DNA of 64,000 nucleotides from Hemiscyllium ocellatum (Eukaryota). The DNA lies in contig NC_083432.1 of the NCBI RefSeq assembly GCF_020745735.1, positions 37,472,533 to 37,536,532 on the forward strand, in the 5' to 3' direction. Shown in pieces: positions 8,352-55,889 of this stretch. The position numbers were made by a program, and so were the translations under genes. How positions within the stretch are numbered: the stretch's first letter is position 1; every line of letters begins with the position of its first letter. Under the pieces are notes generated by a model. The model was given only the letters and a program-made list of their open reading frames with translations, was not told the DNA's origin and made no database searches.

Positions 8352-8660
8352 TGATTAGATTAAATTCCCTACAGTATGGAAACAGGCCCTTTGGCCCAAC
8401 AAGTCCACACCGACCCTCCAGAGAGTAACCCACCCAGACACGTTCCCCATATTTACCCCTGACTAATGCACCTAACACGCTGGGCAATTTAACATGGCCA
8501 ATTCACCCAGCCTGCACATTTTTGGATTGTGGGAGGAAACCAGAGCAAACCCACAATGACATGGGGAGAATGTGCAAACTCCACACAGATAGCTGGAATC
8601 CAACTCAGGTCCCTGGTGCTTGAAGGCAGCAGTGCTAACCACTGAGCCACCATGCCTCCC
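8352..8660 (-). mobile_element. HE1-like SINE
   Basis: tRNA-like head and GATTAGATTA tail; matches the other copies. Confidence 0.85.
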
Positions 8661-9724: not shown

Positions 9725-10019
9725 GTGGCACGGTGGCACAGTGGTTAGCACAACTGTCTCACAGCGCCAGAGACCCGGGTTCAATTCCCTACCTCATGCG
9801 ACTGACCGTGTGGAGTTTGCACATTCTTCCTGTGTCTGCGTGGGTTCCCTCCAGGTGCTCCGGTTTCCTCCCACAGTCCAAAAGTGTGCAGGTTAGGTGA
9901 ATTGACCATGCTAAATTGCTGTAGTGTTAGGTGAAGGGGTAAATGTAGGAGAATTACAGGTTGGTGTGGACCTTGTTGGGCCGAAGAGCCTGTTTCCACA
10001 CTGTAAGAAATCTAATCTA
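9725..10019 (+). mobile_element. HE1-like SINE inserted in an old CR1 fragment (about 9600-10300)
   Basis: A box TGGCACAGTGG, B box GGTTCAATTCC, TCTAATCTA tail; CR1 remnants (RGDLFET) flank it. Confidence 0.85.
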
Positions 10020-23776: not shown

Positions 23777-24738
23777 TGTCCTCAGGTTTGCTGGGTTTAT
23801 CACGTGAGCTGAAAATACACAACGTCACATCTCAGCCTTACTTTAAACAAGAATGACACGACTCAGTGACACCCACTGGAGGGCATCCACAGACTTCTGG
23901 AATATACTCAGACAGTGACATCATAGATGGGAGAAGCAATGTTAATGATTGACAGCTGAGCAGAAGGCTGAGTCTGTGCAGGAAAGTGAGAGTTTGTTCA
24001 AATACAGAGGAGATTAATTTATTGAACTAACAACTCATGACAAGCAGGAATGACGAGGCAGTGTTTGGTTTTTCTAACATTCCTGTTTTCTGTGATTTCT
24101 TGATATGACAGTGATATTGATCTGTTTCAGATGGAAGGAATTATAAATGAGTTTTATTTAAGTTCAGTAAAGTCTTGATTGCCTGCAGACAATTACCTTG
24201 TTTGTGATAGTGATGACGTTTGTAAGAAAATGAAATAGATCGAAATGAAGCTATGTCCTTTCATATTATAAAACCCTGTTGAGAATCATGGGTTTAACAC
24301 AGGATTTCCAATTATAGAAATTGAAGAATGCGCAAAAAAATGCTTCAGATTGAGCCAGCAACAAACAGGGCCATTCAGCCCAGCAAGCTAGTATCATTCC
24401 TTTGGAAGTACAATCAAATTACTTGCTCCTCCCATGCTCTTTTCCCAAACTCTGTAAACTCTGTTTTAGCCAGTGTTTGTACAATTGCAGTTTGTGAGTT
24501 GCTTTTCAATCTGCTCAGGAGAATTGTCTTCTTTTGGAGGATTATCAGTTTGAATTCTCTTCTCCAATGATCAGTGGAGGTGACAACATTGAATGCATTT
24601 GAGGCTTTATACATATTATTGTTTAAATGAGGAGTGATCAGTTATCTAGGAGGCAGGATTGCAGTGTTCTGCCCATCATTAACTCATTGCTGACTTTATG
24701 GAATACAGAAATGTGTTTGACGGGTGGAATGGCCTACT

Positions 24739-25052
24739 GATTAGATTAGATTACTTACAGTGTGGAAACAGGCCCTTCGGCCCAACAAGTCCACACCGAC
24801 CCGCCGAAGCGCAACCCACCCATACCCCTACATTTACCCCTTACCTAACACTAGGGGCAATTTAGCATGGCCAAATCACCTGACCCGCACATCTTTGGAC
24901 TGTGGGAGGAAACCGGAGCACCCGGAGGAAACCCACGCAGACACGGGGAGAACGTGCAAACTCCACACAGTCAGTCGCCTGAGTCGGGAATTGAACCCAG
25001 GTCTCGAGTGCTATGAGGCAGCAGTGCTAACCACTGTGCCACCGTGCCGCCC
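24739..25052 (-). mobile_element. Full-length, young HE1-like SINE
   Basis: Starts GGGCGGCACGGTGGCACAGTGG, has a B box and (TAATC)n tail, CpGs retained; absent at paralogous sites near 28519 and 34824. Confidence 0.9.
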
Positions 25053-25057
25053 AAAAT

Positions 25058-25154
25058 AAAAACGCCGGGCAGCGCCCGTAGTTAACTGGACGCGAACTCG
25101 CGGCCAGAAGGATTTGAGTGAAATCGAAGTAACTACTGAGCTAAAGCCAGCGCC
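25058..25154 (-). ncRNA. Vault RNA-like sequence, probably a retrocopy
   Basis: Minus strand GGCGCTGGCTTTAGCTCAGTAGTTACTTCG...GAGTTCGCGTCC...TAACTACGGGCGCTGCCCGGCGTTTTT (97 nt). Matches the vtRNA 5' signature GGCTGGCTTTAGCTCAGCGGTTACTTCG; terminal stems pair; ends in an oligo-T terminator. Confidence 0.88.
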
Positions 25155-25169
25155 ATAATGTTCATAATA

Positions 25170-26010
25170 GCATAAGAACGTAAGAACTTGGAGCAGGAGT
25201 AGGCCATCTGGCCCTTGCAGCCTGCTCTGCCATTCAATAAAATCATGGCTCATCTTTTCGGGCCCTCAGCTCCATGTACCTGCCCTCTCACTGTAATCTT
25301 CAATACCTTCAATGTTCAAAAAAAAGGTCCATGTCCTCTTGTTGCAGTTTCACGTGCCAGTCGAAATATCCCCACGACATCTATCCTGTGTATTCCCTTC
25401 ATAATTTTATATGTCTCTCTAAAATCACCCCTGATTCTTACAAATTCCAATGAATATAATCGCATTCTACTCAGTTTCTCCTCATACGTCAACCCTCTCA
25501 AATCTGGAATCAACCTCATGAAGCTTTCTCAAGTAAGAGACCAAACCTGCACGCAGTACTCCAGATGTGGCCTCACCAGCACCCCATACAGCTGCAACAT
25601 AACCTCACTGCTTTTAAACTCAATTTCTTTCGCATTGTAGGACAACATTCCATTTGCCTTCCTAATTACGTGTTGTACCTGCATACGAACCTTCTACGAT
25701 TCATTAAAAAGGATGACCAGGTCCCTCTGCATAGCAGCACGCTGCAATGTTTACCTTTCAAGTAATAGTCCTTTTCACGGTTGCTCCTACCTAAATGGAT
25801 GATTTCACATTTATTAACATTGTATTCCATCTGCCAGATCTTTACCTACTCACTTGAAATATTTATGTTCCTCTGCAAAGTTTCCCAGTCCACCATACAC
25901 TTTGCTGTGCCATTCGTCTTAGTGTCATCTGCAAACTTTGAGACATTCCACACGTCCCCAACTCAAAACAACTATGTAAATTGTGAATAACTGTGGTCCC
26001 AACACTGTCC
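25170..26010 (-). mobile_element. CR1 LINE fragment carried in the duplicated unit
   Basis: RLIPDLRGLTYEEKL...RGDFRETYKIMKG; paralog at about 62296-62765. Confidence 0.8.
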
Positions 26011-27454: not shown

Positions 27455-28529
27455 TGTCCTCAGGTTTGCTGGGTTTATCACGTGAGCTGAAAATACACGA
27501 CGTCACATCTCAGCCTTACTTTAAACAAGAATGACTCGACTCAGTGACACCCACTGGAGGGCATCCACAGACTTCTGGAATGTACTCAGACAGTGACATC
27601 ATAGATGGGAGGGGCAATGTTAATGATTGGCAGCTGAGCAGAAGGCTGAGTCTGTGCAGGAAAGTGAGGGTTTGTTCAAACACAGAGGAGATTAATTTAT
27701 TGAAATAACAACTCATGACAAACAGGAATGACGAGGCAGTGTTTGGTTTTTCTAACATTCCAGTTTTCAGTGATTTTGTTGATATGAATGTGATATTGAT
27801 CTGTTTCAGATCAAAGGAATTGTAAATGAGATTTACTTAAGATCAGTAAAGTCTGGATTGCCTGCAGACAATTACCTTGTTTGTGATAATGATAGCATAT
27901 ATTAGAAAATGAAACAGCTCAAAATGAATCTGTCTCTTTTTGTATTATAAAAAGCCGTTGCAAATGAGGGTTTGGTACAGGACTTCCAGTTACTGCATAG
28001 AAAATGAAGAATGTGCAAAAATGGTTCAGCTCGACCCAGCAACAAACAAGGCCATTCGGTCCACCAGGCCGGTGTCATCCCTTTGGAAGCACTATCCAAT
28101 TACTCACATCTCCCATGACCTTTAACCAAACTCTGCAAGCTCTGTTTCCGCAAGTGTATGTACAATATCAGTTTGTGAGAGGCCTTTGAATCTGCTCCCT
28201 CTTCACATTAACATTGTCCTTTCCAGTGACATCAGACAGAAGTCCTAGAATGGGGGGATTAGTTTAAAAATAAGGTCCTGCCATCGTAGTTACATATCAC
28301 TAGAATTGTATTCTTTTGGGGGTTATCAGTTTAAATTCTCTTCCGCAGTGATCAGTGGAGGCTACAGCATTGAATGCATTTGAGGCTTTGTACAGATTGT
28401 TGTTTAAATAAGGAGTGATCAGTTATCTGGGAGACAGGATTGCAGTGTTCTGTCCACCATTAAATCTTTGTTGACCTTATGGAATACAGAAGCGTGTTTG
28501 ATGGGTGGAATGGCCTACTGATGTACATA

Positions 28530-29505
28530 ATAGCATAAGAACGTAAGACCTTGGAGCAGGAGTAGGCCATCTGGCCCTTCCAGCCTGCTCCATCACTCAA
28601 TAAGGTCATGGTTGATCTTTTTCAGCCCTCAGCTCCAGCTACCTGCCCTCTCACTGTAACCCTTAATTCCTTCATTGTACAAAAAAATCTATCTTAACTT
28701 TAAAAACCTTTACTGAAGTCGCATCAATGACTTCAGTGAGCTGAGAATTCTATAGATTCAAAACCCTCTGGGTGAAGAAGTTAATTTTTAATTCTGCTCC
28801 CCCTAATTTTGCGTCTGTGTCCTCTTGTTGCAATTTCACCTGCCAGTGGAATTATTTTCTCTACATTTCTCTGATCTACTCCCTTCATAATATTACGTGT
28901 TTCTATAAGATCCCCCCTCATTCTTTTCAATTTCAATGAATATAATCCCATTCTACTCAGTCTCTCCTTATAAATCAATCCCCTCAACTCCAGAATCAAT
29001 CGTGTGTAGCTCCTCTTCACTCTCTCTCATTCCAGTACATCCTTTCTCATGTAAGAGACCAAAAATGCACTCAATACTCCAGGTGTGGCCTCACGAGTAC
29101 CCTATACAGTTGCAACATAGCGTTCCTGCTTTTCAACTCAATCATTTTTGCAATGAAAGACAACATTCTATTTGGGTTCCTAATTAGGTGTTGTACCACC
29201 AACCTTTGATGATTCATGCACACGGACACCCAGATCCCTCTGCATCGCCGCACGCTGCAACGTTTTACCATTCAAGTGATTGTCCTTTATATTGTTACTC
29301 TTACCTAAATGGTTGACCTCATATTTATTAACACTGCATTCTTTCTGCCAGAGCTTTACCTACTCACTTGAAATATCTCAGTTCCTCTGCAAAGTTTCAT
29401 AGTCCACCACACACTTTGCTGTGCCACTCTGAAAACTTTGAGACATTACACGTGGTCCTCAACTCCAAATCATCTCTGTAAATTGTGATTGTGGTCCCAA
29501 CACTT
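28530..29505 (-). mobile_element. CR1 LINE fragment (duplicated unit)
   Basis: LYRVLVRPHLEY and RMRGDLIET. Confidence 0.85.
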
Positions 29506-37278: not shown

Positions 37279-39019
37279 TGCTCTCAAGTTTGCTGGGCTT
37301 ATCACGTGAGCTGAAAATACACAACGTCACATCTCAGCCTTACTTGAAACAAGAAAGACACGACTCAGTGACACCCACTGGAGGGCATCCACAGACTTCT
37401 GGAATGTACTCAGACAGTGACATCATAGATGGGAGGGGCAATGTTAATGATTGACAGCTGAGCAGAAAGTTGAGTCTGTGCAGGAAAGTGAGGGTTTGTT
37501 CAAACACAGAGGGGATTCATTTATTGAAATAACAACTCATGGCAAGCAGGAATGACGAGGCAGTGTTTGGTTTTTCTAACATTCCTGTTTTCAGTGTCTT
37601 TCTTGGTATGAATGTGATATTGATCTGTTTCAGATGGAAGGAATTATAAATTAGTTTTATTTAGTAAAAAAATCAACAACACCACGTTATAGTGCAACAG
37701 CTTTAATTGGGAGCACACTAGCTTTCGTAGTGACGCTCCTTCATCACTATCAACTGACCTGATGTTGTGTGATTTTTAACTTTGTACACTCCAGTCCAAA
37801 ACCCGCAACTCCAAATCATGAGTTTTATTGAAGTTCAGTGAAGTCTGGATTGCCTGCAGACTATTTCCTTGTTTATGATGATAGCACATTTTTAAAAAAT
37901 GAAACACTTTGAAATGAAGCTGTGCCCTTTCATATTATGAAACCCCGTTGTGAAACAATTCCAGTTGGTGAGAGGTCTCCACTCAGTGACTGCTCCTGGA
38001 GGAATTCCAGAGTCTTCCGGAATGTACTCAGAGAGTGACATCACAGATGGGAGGAGCAATGTTAATGATTGACAACTGAGCAGAAGGCTCGGAATGTGCA
38101 GGAAAGTGAGAGTTTGTAAAAGCAGAAAGGGGATTAATTGATTGAAATATAAACTCATGTCATGAGATAATGAAGTGACAGTATTTGTTTTTCTGACTTT
38201 GGTATTTTAAACGATTTGAATGAGATTGATGTGAAATTTATCACCGAGAAAAATGGGGCGAAAGTCACAACAGCCGCTTTTAAATTGAATAAAGTATTTA
38301 TTCCGTCCTTAAAGCCATTTGTTGTTTTGTAATTGTCATGAAATATATTTAAAGGTGAAAAATGTAAAGTGAAGCTGCTGCATCCTTTAGAATTACTAAG
38401 CCCTGTGGCTAATTATGAGACCATATGAGATTTCCAAAATGGAAAATGGAGAATACACGACAATAGATTTTTTTTAGATTAGATTAATTACAGTGTGGAA
38501 GTTTCGAATGTGACAGCAGATGGCGAGGCCATTCGGTCCACCAGGTCAGTGTCAACTGTTTGGAAATGCTATGCAATTACTCACTCCTCCCATGTTCTTT
38601 TGCTATGGTCTGCAAATTCTCTCTTAGCAATTAAAAGTACAATTCCAGACTGTGAGAGGCCTTTGGGTCTGCTACCTCCTTGCACTCCCATTTTCCGATC
38701 TGGTTTATGAGAAACAGGACCAAAGAAGGAGAACGATTAATCAAATTTTAGGTTCTACATACATTTTGTGTCTCTTCGCTATTTGTGCTGGATAAATATG
38801 TTTCTAATGTATCTCTTGTGGCATAAGTCACTTCTATTCTTGGACTAAGGGTATTGTTGTTAATATTTCTCGCTGTTCTGTAAACCACGTGTTTGTCAGT
38901 CAGTGTGATCCAGTAAATTGACTGATGGAACCAAGCTGCTGAGTGATATTGAGGGAAGTATGACACATCTTCCTGATGCTGTGCCACAGTGACTGTTCTT
39001 TAATACATTAGATTGAAAG

Positions 39020-50691: not shown

Positions 50692-52585
50692 AACCCCGCA
50701 CCGCCCATTTCTACCTCCTGCCCAAAATCCACTAACCTGACTGCCCCGGCCGACCCATTGTCTCAGCCTGCTCCTGCCCCACTGAACTCATCTCCGTGTA
50801 CCTCGACACGGTTCTGTCCCCTTTAGTCCAAGAACTCCCCACCTACGTTCAGGACACCATCCACGCCCTCCACCTCCTCCATGATTTTCGCTTCCCCGGT
50901 CCCCAACGCCTTATCTTCACCATGGACATCCAGTTCCTGTACACCTCCATCCCCCATCACGAAGGACTCAAAGCCCTCCGCTTCTTCCTTTCCCGCCGCA
51001 CCAACCAGTACCCTTCCACTGACACCCTCCTTCGGCTGACTGAACTGGTCCTCACCCTGAATAACTTCTCTTTCCAATCCTCCCACTTCCTCCAAACTAA
51101 AGGAGTTGCCATGGGCACCCGCATGGGCCCCAGCTATGCCTGTCTCTTTGTAGGATATGTGGAACAGTCCATCATCCGCAACTACACTGGCACCACCCCC
51201 CACCTTTTCCTCCGCTACATCGATGACTATATCGGTGCCGCCTTGTGCTCCCACGAGGAGGTTGAACAGTTCATCAACTTTACCAACACCTTCCATCCCG
51301 ACCTCAAATTCACCTGGACTGTCTCAGACTCCTCCCTCCCCTTCCTAGACCTTTCCATTTCTATCTCGGGCGACCGACTCAACACAGACATCTACTATAA
51401 ACTGACTGACTCCCACAGCTACCTAGACTACACCTCCTCCCACCCTGCTCCCTGTAAAAACTCCATCCCATATTCCCAATTCCTTCGTCTCCGCCGCATC
51501 TGCTCCCAGGAGGACCAGTTCCAACACCGCAGAGCCCAGATGGCCTCCTTCTTCAAGGACCACAGATTCCCCCCAGACGTGATCGACGATGCCCTCCACC
51601 ACATCTCCTCCACTTCCCGCTCCTCCGCCCTTGAGCCCCGCTCCTCCAACCGCCACCAAGACAGAACCCCACTGGTTCTCACCTACCACCCCACCAACCT
51701 CCGTATACAACGTATCATCCGCCGTCATTTCCGCCACCTCCAAACGGACCCCACCACCAGGGATATATTTCCCTCCCCTCCCCTATCAGCGTTCCGCAAA
51801 GACCACTCCCTTCGTGACTCCCTCGTCAAGTCCACACCCCCCACCAACCCAACCTCCACTCCCTGCACCTTCCCTGCAACCACAGGAAATGTAAAACTTG
51901 CGCCCACACCTCCTCCTCACTTCCCTCCAAGCCCCCAAGGGATCCTTCCATATCCGCCACAAGTTCACCTGTACCTCCACACACATCAGCTATTGCATCC
52001 GCTGCACCCGATGTGGCCTCCTCCATGTTGGGGAGACGGGACGCTTACATGCGGAACGCTTCAGAGACCACCTCAGGGACGCCCGGACCAACCAACCCAA
52101 CCACCCAGTGGCTCAACACTTTAACTCTCCCTCCCACTCCACCGAGGACATGCAGGTCCTTGGACTCTTCCACCGGCAGAACATAACAACATGACGGCTG
52201 GAGGAGGAGCGCCTCATCTTCCGCCTGGGAACGCTCCAACCACAAGGAATGAACTCAGATTTCTCCAGTTTCCTCATTTCCCCTCCCCCCACCTTGTCTC
52301 AGTCGGTTCCCTCAACTCAGAACCGCCCTCCTAACCTGCAATCTTCTTCCTGACCTCTCCGCCCCCACCCCACTCAGGCCTATCACCCTCACCTTGTCCT
52401 CCTTCCACCTATCACATCTCCATCGCCCGGCCCCCAAGTCCCTCCTCCCTACCTTTTATCTTAGCCTGCTTGGCACACTCTCCTCATTCCTGATGAAGGG
52501 CTTATGCCCGAAACGTCGAATTTCCTATTCCTTGGATGCTGCCTGACCTGCTGTGCTTTAACCAGCAACACGTTTTCAACTGTCA
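50692..52585 (+). mobile_element. Penelope-like retroelement, 5'-truncated, best-preserved copy
   Basis: 442-aa ORF with RT motifs (RYIDD); GIY-YIG ISYCIRCTRCGLLHVGETGR after a frameshift near 51880; pLTR. Confidence 0.93.
52486..52521 (+). ncRNA. Minimal hammerhead ribozyme motif in Penelope pLTR
   Basis: ATTC-CTGATGA-A-GGGC-TTAT-GCCC-GAAAC-GTC-GAAT: intact core with paired stems I and II. Confidence 0.8.
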
Positions 52586-54189
52586 AGCTTGGTTCCATCA
52601 GTCAATTTACTGGATCACACTGACTGACAAACACATGGTTATTAGAACAGCAAGAAATATGAACAACAATACCCTTAGTCCAAGAGTAGAAGTGACTTAT
52701 GCCACAAGAGATACTTTAGAAACATATTTATCCAGCACAAATACCAAGGAGACATAAAATTTACATAGAACCTAAAATTTGATTAATCGTTCTCCTTCTT
52801 TGGTCCTGTTTCTCATAAACCAGAACGGAAAATGGGAGTGCAAGAAGGTGGTAGCTCCAAAGGCCTCTCACAGTCTGGAATTGTACTTATAATTGCAAAG
52901 AGAGAATTTGCAGACCATAGCAAAAGAACATGGGAGGAGTGAGTAATTGCATAGCATTTCCGAACAGTTGACACTGACCTGGTGGACCGAATGGCCTCGC
53001 CATCTGCTGTCACATTCGAAACTTCCACACTGTAATTAATCTAATCTAAAAAAAATCTATTGTCGTGTATTCTCCATTTTCCATTTTGGAAATCTCATAT
53101 GGTCTCATAATTAGCCACAGGGCTTAGTAATTCTAAAGGATGCAGCAGCTTCACTTTACAATTTTCACCTTTAAATATATTTCATGACAATTACAAAACA
53201 ACGAATGGCTTTAAGGACGGAATAAATACTTTATTCAATTTAAAAGCGGCTGATGTGACTTTCGCCCCAGTTTTCTCGGTGATAAATTTCACATCAATCT
53301 CATTCAAATCGTTTAAAATACCAAAGTCAGAAAAACAAATACTGTCACTTCATTATCTCATGACATGAGTTTATATTTCAATCAATTAATCCCCTTTCTG
53401 CTTTTACAAACTCTCACTTTCCTGCACATTCCGAGCCTTCTGCTCAGTTGTCAATCATTAACATTGCTCCTCCCATCTGTGCTGTCACTCTCTGAGTACA
53501 TTCCGGAAGACTCTGGAATTCCTCCAGAGCAGTCACTGAGTGGAGACCTCTCACAAACACAAATGTACACATTTAAAATGTGTTATCATCATAAACAAGG
53601 AAATAGTCTGCAGGCAATCCGGACTTTACTGAACTTCAATAAAACTCATGATTTGGAGATGCCGGTTTTGGACTGGAGTGTACAAAGTTAAAAATCACAC
53701 AACATCAGGTCAGTTGATAGTGATGAAGGAGCGTCACTACGAAAGCTAGTGTGCTCCCAATTAAACCTGTTGCACTACAACGTGGTGTTGTTGATTTTTT
53801 TACCAAAATAAAACTCATTTACAATTCCTTCCATCTGAAACAGATCAATATCACATTCATACCAAGAAAGTCACTGAAAACAGGAATGTTAGAAAAACCA
53901 AACACTGCCTCGTCATTCCTGTTTGCCATGAGTTGTTATTTCAATAAATTAATCTCCTCTGTGTTTGAACAAACCCTCACTTTCCTGCACAGACTCAGCC
54001 TTCTGCTCAGCTGTCAATCATTAACATTGCCCCTCCCATCTATGATGTCACTGTCTGAGTACATTCCAGAAGTCTGTGGATGCCCTCCAGTGGGTGTCAC
54101 TGAGTCGAGTCTTTCTTGTTTAAAGTAAGGCTGAGATGTGACGTCGTGTATTTTCAGCTCACGTGATAAACCCAGCAAACCTGAGGACA

Positions 54190-54981: not shown

Positions 54982-55284
54982 GACTCTGTTACAATGAACA
55001 GCTAAAGATGTAATAATTGTTTAAAAGCAGCAATGAATTTCTGTGAATGTGAGATAAAGAGATATTGCTGTCCAATTAATAGTTTTCAACTTGGAAACCT
55101 ATAAAATGCTGTTATCAATGTTCTTGTGGTTTATTTTTGAATGTATATTGGAAGAGTAAATACTTTTGAAATTTAATTATAATGATTCTGCCTATTTACT
55201 TGATAAAACGAAAACTGATGAATCACTTTAACTTGCATAATCTTAATTAAGGGAAACAAGTCTTTTTTTACTTGGATTAATTTT

Positions 55285-55562
55285 GGGTGGCACGGTGGCA
55301 CAGTGGTTAGCACTGCTGCCTCACAGCGCCTGACACCCGGGTTCAATTCCCGACTCAGGCGACTGACTGTGTGGAGTTTGCACGTTCTCCCCATGTCTGC
55401 GTGGGTTTCCTCCCACAGTCCAAAGATGTGCAGGTCAGATGAATTGGCTATGCTAAATTGCCCCTTACCTAATACGATGGGGTATGGATGGGTTGTGCTT
55501 CGGCAGGTCGGTGTGGACTTGTTGGGCCGAAGGGCCTGTTTCCACACTGTAAGTCTAATCTA
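55285..55562 (+). mobile_element. HE1-like SINE specific to the right arm
   Basis: Absent at the mirror site (about 36185). Confidence 0.88.
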
Positions 55563-55889
55563 AAACAAAATTTAAAAGACAGAAACAAAATCAGGTGGTC
55601 AAGATCTGCCTATGTCTGAGCTCAGATCTGTCAAGAATGTCAAGCTACTATGAAGAGACTGTGCTGAAATATTTGTGTACACCTCAGTCTCAGGGATAAT
55701 CCCAACAGCATCACTATCATGAGCAACAACAGGTTGTCATCCAACTCATACACCAGTCTGTCCACCACTCAGTTATTGAACGGTGGGAAACAGTTTCATT
55801 GTGGTTAATTGATCATTGTAACTGTCAGGGAGAGAAGATCAACAATATTAATGATACTACACACTTCAACATAAGAAATAGGAAGCGTC

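What the first reader, a model, noticed from the sequence alone, without database searches (positions are those of the whole stretch)
24739..25157. Vault RNA fused to an HE1 SINE and inserted in the hsp30 cluster
Seen: paralogous sites (near 28519, 34824, 62770) read GGCCTACTGATGTWCA, but here about 420 bp is inserted. On the minus strand it reads as a 97-nt vault-RNA-like sequence, then TTTTTATTTT, then the first base of a full-length HE1 SINE. Both parts keep their CpGs, which suggests a young insertion. Established: LINE machinery makes small-RNA chimeras such as U6-L1. Inference: this is a vtRNA-SINE chimera, formed by template switching or by Pol III read-through from a vtRNA gene upstream of a SINE. 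If multi-copy, it would be a vault-RNA-headed SINE family, a type I do not know to have been described.
Basis: partly seen in the sequence, partly recalled or inferred. Interest (0 to 1): 0.9.

Follow-up and report, generated by a model that had tools for sequence, protein, structure and literature searches.

The report
Vault RNA copy fused to shark SINE
A complete copy of a vault RNA sits head-to-tail against a full-length HE1-type SINE, and the two entered one unit of the epaulette shark hsp30 gene array as a single 416-bp block; it is a clean RNA-to-RNA chimeric retrocopy with an unreported partner, but nothing here shows it is a new repeat family.

Summary
Rfam's Vault model matches window 25153-25058 (minus strand) over its full length at 63.2 bits (cut-off 34, E 6e-12). 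On that strand the insert reads TATG, a 96-nt vault RNA ending in T5, ATTTT, then a full-length HE1-like V-SINE (25052-24742).

The whole 416 bp (24742-25157) is missing from four close paralogous sites, two distant ones and seven sites in Chiloscyllium punctatum. Only 'AT' is duplicated at the outer edges. The vault part keeps 10 CpGs (obs/exp 1.43; window 0.32), and the SINE part has the fewest private changes of the window's four full-length copies. The insertion is therefore young and unique to one array unit.

Best reading: one retroposition event joined a Pol III vault transcript to HE1 RNA. This happened either by reverse-transcriptase template switching at the SINE's 5' end (favoured) or by read-through from a vault gene with an HE1 just downstream.

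The 'vault-headed SINE family' idea could not be tested, because no shark genome search was available. It is also disfavoured: T5 and T4 terminators lie between the two parts, and the window holds one copy.

The scan's first-stage notes list the same vault stretch and, on other DNA of this genome, tRNA-HE1 and mRNA-HE1 composites. None of those was checked here.

The parts
25158..25159 (-). 'AT' of the target on the 5' side of the element. It is one of the two copies of the only duplicated target bases.
   Evidence: Alignment of the filled site with four empty paralogous sites; bases read directly.
25154..25157 (-). Four extra bases, TATG, between the target DNA and base 1 of the vault RNA. 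They are absent from the empty sites and their origin is unknown (untemplated addition, or a transcription start a few bases upstream).
25058..25153 (-). Full-length vault RNA copy of 96 nt. It has box A TAGCTCAGTAG (25143-25133), box B-like AGTTCGCGTCC (25098-25088), a closing 5'/3' stem and a T5 terminator (25062-25058). It contains 10 CpGs.
   Evidence: Rfam RF00006 at 63.2 bits, E 6e-12, model 1-99; fold; CpG obs/exp 1.43; motifs read directly.
25053..25057 (-). Spacer ATTTT. It provides a second T4 run and so looks like a back-up Pol III terminator of the parent vault gene. Its last T could instead belong to the SINE's 5' end.
   Evidence: The HE1 at 55284 also has one extra T before GGG.
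24742..25052 (-). Full-length HE1-like V-SINE of 311 bp. It has a tRNA-like head with box A TGGCACAGTGG (25041-25031) and box B GGTTCAATTCC (24997-24987), a conserved central part, and a tail ...CCACACTGTAAGTAATCTAATCTA.
   Evidence: 76-83% identity to other copies at 55284-55568, 9727-10019 and 8352-8660. It starts at the same base as the copy whose ends are fixed by empty sites. It has the fewest private changes, 4 of 249.
24740..24741 (-). 'AT' of the target on the 3' side. Together with the next C it continues the TAATC tail repeat in register, giving 3 nt of tail/target microhomology.

Best explanation
This is a single chimeric retrocopy. The reverse transcriptase that mobilises HE1 (its partner LINE, which recognises the HE1 3' tail) primed on the nicked target at ...ACAT/CAG, using the TAATC tail repeat. 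It copied HE1 RNA to its very 5' end. It then jumped to the 3' end of a primary Pol III vault RNA transcript that still carried its U-tract (ending ...GUUUUUAUUUU) and copied that to its 5' end. The cDNA was joined to the target with four extra bases and almost no target duplication.

The result is a 416-bp block: vault RNA, terminator, then a complete SINE. The event happened on the terminal branch of one hsp30 array unit in the Hemiscyllium lineage and is recent.

Shown: the parts, their order and orientation, the exact ends, the empty sites and the youth of the insert. Inferred: the template switch itself, and that ATTTT comes from the parent gene's second terminator.

The product is a dispersed, structurally intact vault RNA gene copy with its internal promoter and terminator. 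Because the terminators precede the SINE, it is not expected to spread as a unit.
For: Full-length Vault model hit with an intact fold.

The block is absent from four close and two distant paralogous sites in the window and from seven sites in Chiloscyllium punctatum. The filled unit nests among empty ones on the tree, with 99/99 and 100/98 support.

The edges of the block coincide with RNA ends. Only 4 nt lie upstream of vault base 1, so no vault gene promoter DNA came along. The 3' edge is the same SINE tail as in other HE1 copies.

The SINE part starts at the canonical 5' base, as defined by an independent HE1 insertion with empty sites and a 5-bp duplication.

The 'AT' duplication lies at the outer edges of the composite. 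No duplication flanks the SINE part alone.

Both parts are young.

Precedent for full-length small RNA joined 5' to a LINE or SINE by template switching: WEIRD-MgSINE, B2-U6-L1 and U6-L1 (PMC2104539, PMC13174262).

Unverified first-stage notes report tRNA-HE1 and RPLP1 mRNA-HE1 composites elsewhere in this genome.
Against: The outer duplication is only 2 bp, which has about a 1 in 16 chance of arising by accident, so one shared target duplication is not proven.

The 5-nt ATTTT spacer requires the acceptor RNA to have read through T5 and stopped at the next T4, or requires untemplated bases.

TATG at the 5' edge is unexplained.

The parent vault gene was not seen, so read-through from a vault gene with an HE1 inserted 5 nt behind its terminator fits the same sequence.

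Template switching has not been demonstrated for the HE1 partner LINE.
Confidence: 0.55

Rival explanations
1. Read-through co-transcript. Somewhere in the genome an HE1 landed 5 nt behind the T5 of a vault RNA gene. A rare transcript starting at vault +1 ran through T5 and T4 into the SINE. The SINE's 3' tail was then recognised by the LINE enzyme, and the whole RNA was retroposed here as one unit.
For: The layout fits equally well: vault, its terminator, 5 nt, then a complete SINE. The independent HE1 at 55284 inserted behind ...TTAATTT with duplication AATTT, so a T-rich terminator region looks like a plausible HE1 target. An unverified first-stage note describes a pre-tRNA-Leu + 254-nt trailer + HE1 composite in this genome, which would be hard to explain without read-through.
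Against: Two consecutive Pol III terminators (T5, then T4) must both be passed. A special source locus is required and has not been seen. An unverified RPLP1 mRNA-HE1 composite cannot arise by Pol III read-through and points to template switching as a general route.
Confidence: 0.27
2. A propagating composite SINE family with a vault RNA head. The vault + HE1 unit is itself a master-derived, multi-copy element, and this is one of its copies.
For: The unit carries Pol III promoters and a LINE-recognised tail, and it is young. No literature record of a vault-headed SINE was found, so it would not have been named. Copy number in the genome was not testable.
Against: There is one vault hit in 64 kb that holds at least seven HE1 copies or fragments. 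The one HE1 that seemed to share the upstream ATTTT has target DNA there. T5 and T4 between head and body should stop transcripts from the vault promoter, while the SINE's own promoter starts downstream of the vault part. In 1539 noted windows of this genome, 'vault' appears only for this stretch. That last point is weak, because it rests on unchecked readers' notes.
Confidence: 0.08
3. Two separate events at the same spot (an HE1 insertion, and a vault RNA retrocopy landing exactly at its 5' edge, in either order), or a DNA-level patch copied from elsewhere during break repair.
For: With only 2 bp duplicated, a single event is not strictly proven. The true ortholog of this array unit in Chiloscyllium was not sampled.
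Against: None of 13 comparable sites carries one part alone. No separate duplication flanks the SINE part (TATTTT upstream, ATCAGT downstream). The vault part has no A-tail or LINE tail of its own with which to be retroposed alone. End-to-end, same-strand abutment of two complete RNAs is very unlikely by chance. A DNA patch would not be expected to start 4 nt before an RNA's first base and end at a SINE tail.
Confidence: 0.07

Closest known systems
U6-L1 and related small-RNA/LINE or SINE chimeric retrocopies (U6-L1, U3-L1, B2-U6-L1 in mammals; WEIRD-MGL and WEIRD-MgSINE in Magnaporthe)
   Same: A complete small non-coding RNA lies at the 5' side, in the same orientation, fused directly to a retroelement that supplies the 3' end used for priming. 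The whole is inserted as one block (PMC2104539, PMC13174262).
   Different: The 5' partner is a vault RNA, which does not appear among the partners discussed in the two papers read, PMC13174262 and PMC2104539. The 3' partner is a full-length SINE rather than a 5'-truncated LINE. There is no poly(A), and the enzyme would be the tail-specific partner LINE of HE1 in a shark, not L1. The target duplication is 2 bp instead of the 12-16 bp seen for L1 or MGL.
Vault RNA retrocopies in human (retroSeeker, PMC11727581)
   Same: A vault RNA copied into a new genomic place through an RNA intermediate.
   Different: The human copy has poly(A) and clear target duplications, which are L1 hallmarks. This one has no A-tail and instead rides on a SINE's 3' tail.
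Composite or dimeric SINEs and the template-switch model of SINE birth (small RNA head + LINE-derived tail; SINEU, SINE28, 5S and 7SL SINEs)
   Same: A Pol III small-RNA module sits in front of a body and tail that a LINE recognises. This is the kind of intermediate those models assume (head types listed in PMC13174262 section 17; hagfish 7SL SINEs in PMC7245038).
   Different: Those are multi-copy families transcribed through the whole unit. Here only one copy is known, and two terminators separate head and body.
HE1 / V-SINE superfamily (sharks and rays; partner LINE HER1; PMC3747384 table)
   Same: The 3' part has a tRNA-like head, a central segment conserved as far as eel sequences and a tail shared with another retroelement fragment in the window. 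The host is an elasmobranch.
   Different: Nothing differs for the SINE part itself, but it was not compared with a reference HE1 sequence here.

Membership tests
Vault RNA (Rfam RF00006) | Covariance-model score at or above the curated cut-off over the full model | tested here: met
   63.2 bits against 34, model 1-99 of 99, E 6e-12.
Vault RNA (Rfam RF00006) | 5'/3' closing stem (panhandle) with a variable central part | tested here: met
   The MFE fold pairs GCGCUGGC with GCCCGGCG; -35.9 kcal/mol, z -3.0.
Vault RNA (Rfam RF00006) | Internal Pol III boxes A and B and a T-run terminator | tested here: met
   Box A TAGCTCAGTAG (1 mismatch to TRGCNNAGTGG), box B AGTTCGCGTCC (2 mismatches to GGTTCGANNCC), and T5 followed by T4. 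The consensus motifs are from general knowledge.
Vault RNA (Rfam RF00006) | Expressed and bound in vault particles; location at the ancestral vault RNA locus | not testable with these tools
   No RNA data and no access to the rest of the genome. The location in the hsp30 array is secondary, because it is an insertion.
HE1 / V-SINE | tRNA-like head with A and B boxes | tested here: met
   TGGCACAGTGG and GGTTCAATTCC at the expected spacing. Neither ARAGORN nor Rfam calls it a tRNA, as is usual for degenerate SINE heads.
HE1 / V-SINE | Central segment strongly conserved across vertebrate V-SINEs | tested here: inconclusive
   The translated central part matches 64-94% to short ORFs from eel transcripts and fish-like metagenome contigs. 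No reference HE1, DANA or Lun1 sequence was available for direct comparison.
HE1 / V-SINE | 3' tail shared with a partner LINE | tested here: inconclusive
   The last 30-60 nt are shared with non-SINE retroelement 3' fragments at 52859-53049 and 38474-38673. No LINE coding region is attached to them. The nearby RT ORF is Penelope-like.
HE1 / V-SINE | Interspersed multi-copy element with short target duplications | tested here: met
   At least four full-length copies plus fragments in the window. The copy at 55284-55568 has three empty paralogous sites and the duplication AATTT.
Template-switch chimeric retrocopy (U6-L1 type) | Full-length small RNA at the 5' side, same orientation, ending at its RNA 3' end, joined directly to the retroelement | tested here: met
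   Vault positions 1-99 including the U-tract, then 5 nt (ATTTT), then SINE base 1. The 5-nt spacer is the one irregularity.
Template-switch chimeric retrocopy (U6-L1 type) | One target-site duplication around the whole chimera | tested here: inconclusive
   Only 'AT' is duplicated, which is too short to count as proof.
Template-switch chimeric retrocopy (U6-L1 type) | Empty site lacks both parts, and no site has one part only | tested here: met
   4 + 2 paralogous sites in the window and 7 sites in Chiloscyllium punctatum are all empty. The strict ortholog was not sampled.
Vault-headed SINE family (hypothetical) | Many copies of the same junction with different flanks | not testable with these tools
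   One copy in the window. Searches of the protein-word index and the metagenome collection were blank, and a control showed the protein-index blank to be uninformative.
Vault-headed SINE family (hypothetical) | Pol III transcript can run from the head through the tail | tested here: not met
   T5 and T4 lie between head and body. They are the only runs of four or more T on the element strand in the insert plus 200 nt downstream. This was judged from sequence only.

The most novel reading that the evidence does not exclude
The vault + HE1 unit, or more broadly 'Pol III transcript + HE1' units, is not a one-off. On this reading the HE1 machinery of hemiscylliid sharks routinely captures nascent Pol III RNAs at the SINE's 5' end, and at least one such product, the vault-headed one, has itself multiplied. 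That would give the first SINE lineage with a vault RNA head and a live view of how SINEs acquire new heads.
Probability: 0.08. Interest if true: 0.75.

Novelty: new member of a known kind. Interest (0 to 1): 0.42.

Why it matters
Chimeric retrocopies made of a small RNA and a retroelement are the assumed raw material for new SINE families. They are also the main evidence that LINE reverse transcriptases switch templates in vivo. Almost all documented cases come from mammalian L1 and one fungal LINE.

This case has clean ends, many empty sites, a full-length SINE as donor and a vault RNA as acceptor, in a shark. If it was made by template switching, the same behaviour extends to a tail-specific LINE/SINE pair in cartilaginous fish. 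It also shows a way for vault RNA genes to disperse without a poly(A)-dependent LINE.

As a single locus it is a well-documented example, not a new principle. Its value would rise sharply if the unverified tRNA-HE1 and mRNA-HE1 composites noted elsewhere in this genome prove to be the same process, or if more vault-HE1 copies exist.

Tried and rejected
1. 'ATTTT belongs to the SINE, or the HE1 at 55277 is a 5'-truncated vault chimera.' BLAST extended that copy's match into TTTATTTT. Three empty paralogous sites then showed that its upstream TTAATTT is target DNA with a 5-bp duplication, AATTT. Rejected.

2. Deletion instead of insertion. The outgroup units and both clades of array units are empty, and the filled unit nests among them. 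The indel edges also equal element ends. Rejected.

3. Copy number through proteins. The 47-residue ORF spanning vault, junction and SINE head found nothing among 5.8 billion proteins. As a control, the same reading frame of the SINE body alone found only 12 proteins, mostly stray metagenome contigs. The collection therefore holds almost no shark repeat ORFs, and the blank is uninformative.

4. Two exact-pattern scans of the metagenome contigs (the junction, then the vault core) found nothing, as expected for shark DNA.

5. Linking the HE1-like tail at 53023-53049 to the RT ORF at 50796-52121 as 'the partner LINE'. That ORF resembles Penelope-like elements (HTH_animal/RVT_1/GIY-YIG), so the link was dropped.

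6. Orthologous site in Chiloscyllium punctatum. Two 20-kb pieces of its hsp30 array were fetched, and all seven sites in them are empty. The tree shows that none is the strict ortholog of the filled unit. I did not fetch more of the array. The SINE part (at most 1.6% private change) looks younger than the species split (about 6% between species in the same tree), so an empty ortholog is expected and would not discriminate between the readings.

7. The parent vault gene could not be reached. There is no DNA search of this genome, and no permitted protein handle on its likely neighbourhood.

8. Literature searches for a vault-derived SINE found none. Buzdin et al. 2003 (PMC169886) is not held.

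Full report
**What is there**

On the minus strand, window 25157-24742 reads as follows:
- TATG;
- a 96-nt sequence that ends in T5;
- ATTTT;
- a 311-bp SINE that begins GGGCGGCACGGTGGCACAGTGG and ends CCACACTGTAAGTAATCTAATCTA.

Rfam's Vault model (RF00006) matches 25153-25058 over all 99 model positions at 63.2 bits. The curated cut-off is 34, and E is 6.4e-12 for the 64-kb window. It is the only Rfam family reaching its threshold in the window.

The RNA folds into the expected panhandle, with the 5' GCGCUGGC paired to the 3' GCCCGGCG (-35.9 kcal/mol, z -3.0 against shuffles). It carries box A (TAGCTCAGTAG), a box-B-like AGTTCGCGTCC and a T5 terminator.

The SINE part has a tRNA-type box A (TGGCACAGTGG) and box B (GGTTCAATTCC). 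It is 76-83% identical to other copies in the window: 55284-55568, 9727-10019 and 8352-8660, plus fragments.

The translated central segment of the SINE matches short ORFs from eel and fish-like contigs at 64-94%. That fits the V-SINE superfamily, to which HE1 belongs; its partner LINE is HER1 (PMC3747384, table). I could not compare it with a reference HE1 sequence.

**It is an insertion, and it came in as one block**

The window is part of the hsp30 (HSP20-domain) gene array of Hemiscyllium ocellatum, GCA_020745735.1 CM036690.1.

Alignment gives these states:
- filled site: GGCCTACTGAT | 416 bp | ATGTTCATAATAGC;
- empty site: GGCCTACTGATGTACATAATAGC.

Only 'AT' is present at both edges.

Two more distant paralogous units (40712, 48105) are also empty. 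So are all seven comparable sites in two 20-kb pieces of the Chiloscyllium punctatum array.

On a maximum-likelihood tree of the flanks, the units fall into two clades, each holding both species. The filled unit is sister (99/99, 100/98) to a mixed clade of empty units. The insertion therefore happened on its own terminal branch, and deletion in the other units is excluded.

No site carries only the SINE or only the vault part.

The edges of the block are element ends:
- Four bases precede vault position 1, so no vault-gene promoter DNA came along.
- The 3' edge is the same tail as in other HE1 copies.
- The tail's TAATC repeat runs in register into the target's ATC, a 3-nt microhomology of the kind expected if the nicked target primed on the tail repeat.
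- The SINE part alone has no duplication (TATTTT upstream, ATCAGT downstream).

**Age**

The vault part keeps 10 CpGs in 96 nt (obs/exp 1.43) and the SINE part 16 (0.66). Other HE1 copies range from 0.16 to 0.53, and the window is 0.32.

Among the four full-length copies, this one has the fewest private substitutions: 4 of 249 columns, against 10, 17 and 26. The insert is probably younger than the Hemiscyllium/Chiloscyllium split, since the units differ by about 6% between species on the same tree.

**Mechanism**

Two complete Pol III-type RNAs lie end to end on the same strand, with one outer pair of edges, absent together everywhere else. That is the signature of an RNA-level chimera retroposed by the enzyme that recognises the SINE tail.

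Two routes fit.

(a) Template switch. Reverse transcription of HE1 RNA reaches its 5' end and continues on the 3' end of a vault RNA primary transcript. This is the accepted origin of U6-L1, B2-U6-L1 and WEIRD-MgSINE chimeras (PMC2104539; PMC13174262). It needs the acceptor RNA to end ...GUUUUUAUUUU, that is, a transcript that passed T5 and stopped at the next T4, or a few added bases.

(b) Read-through. An HE1 sits 5 nt behind a vault gene's terminator at some source locus, and a rare transcript runs through T5 and T4 into it. The independent HE1 at 55284 landed behind TTAATTT (duplication AATTT), so a T-rich terminator region is a believable HE1 target.

First-stage notes on other parts of this genome, none checked here, describe several similar composites:
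- tRNA-Lys-HE1;
- pre-tRNA-Leu-SINE;
- pre-tRNA-Leu + 254-nt trailer + HE1;
- tRNA-Pro-HE1;
- RPLP1 mRNA-HE1.

The trailer case favours (b) and the mRNA case favours (a). I put (a) at about 0.55 and (b) at about 0.27.

TATG at the 5' edge is unexplained under both routes. Extra bases at 5' junctions are common in LINE-mediated insertions (general knowledge).

**The family idea**

One vault hit exists in a window that holds at least seven HE1 copies or fragments.

The one hint of a second copy did not hold up. BLAST extended the match of the HE1 at 55277 into TTTATTTT, but three empty paralogous sites show that its upstream TTAATTT is target DNA.

On the element strand, the only runs of four or more T in the insert and the next 200 nt are the T5 and T4 between the two parts. 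Transcripts from the vault promoter should therefore stop before the SINE, while the SINE's own promoter starts downstream of the vault part. The composite is poorly built to spread as a unit.

Genome-wide copy number could not be tested:
- The junction ORF found nothing in the protein index, but a control with the SINE body found only 12 stray proteins, so that blank carries no weight.
- Metagenome scans were blank, as expected.

No paper describing a vault-derived SINE was found. Human vault RNA retrocopies with poly(A) are known (PMC11727581).

**Verdict**

The chimera interpretation is well supported, the route is unresolved, and the SINE-family inference is unsupported and mechanistically unlikely.

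It is a new member (vault RNA as 5' partner, a full-length shark V-SINE as 3' partner) of the known class of LINE-mediated chimeric retrocopies. It also creates a dispersed, structurally intact vault RNA gene copy inside a heat-shock gene array.

Noticed in passing
window 50796-52300 (+): The 442-aa RT ORF, and an overlapping ORF with a CIRC...GETGR...FRDH motif, resemble Penelope-like elements (Atlas clusters with HTH_animal, RVT_1 and GIY-YIG). This is not a LINE.
   Followed up: partly
window 52859-53049 (+) and 38474-38673 (-): Two copies, in inverted array units, of a short retroelement 3' fragment. Its last 30-60 nt (…GGACCGAATGGCC…TTCCACACTGTAATTAATCTAATCTAAAAAAAA) match the HE1 tail but its upstream part does not. 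It is a candidate 3' end of HE1's partner LINE.
   Followed up: partly
window 24700-24741 + 25158-25215, and paralogs e.g. 28480-28570: The insertion site lies at the centre of an inverted pair of a common repeat tail (ATGGCCTACT ... AGTAGGCCAT), that is, two old elements head to head.
   Followed up: no
window 55284-55568 (+): An HE1 copy with clean empty sites in three paralogous units and a 5-bp duplication, AATTT. It has one extra T before GGG and two internal deletions of about 19 bp relative to the vault-linked copy.
   Followed up: yes
window-wide; L002, L003 (Chiloscyllium punctatum CM105009.1 15.70-15.82 Mb): The intergenic units of the hsp30 array fall into two well-supported clades, each containing units of both Hemiscyllium and Chiloscyllium. 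The two-type array structure therefore predates the split of the genera.
   Followed up: partly
protein P0011: A 65-aa 'hypothetical protein' of a Cyanobacteria MAG (J06634_6) matches the V-SINE reading frame at 74%. It is probably fish DNA contamination in that bin. Several ENA/JGI metagenome contigs do the same.
   Followed up: no
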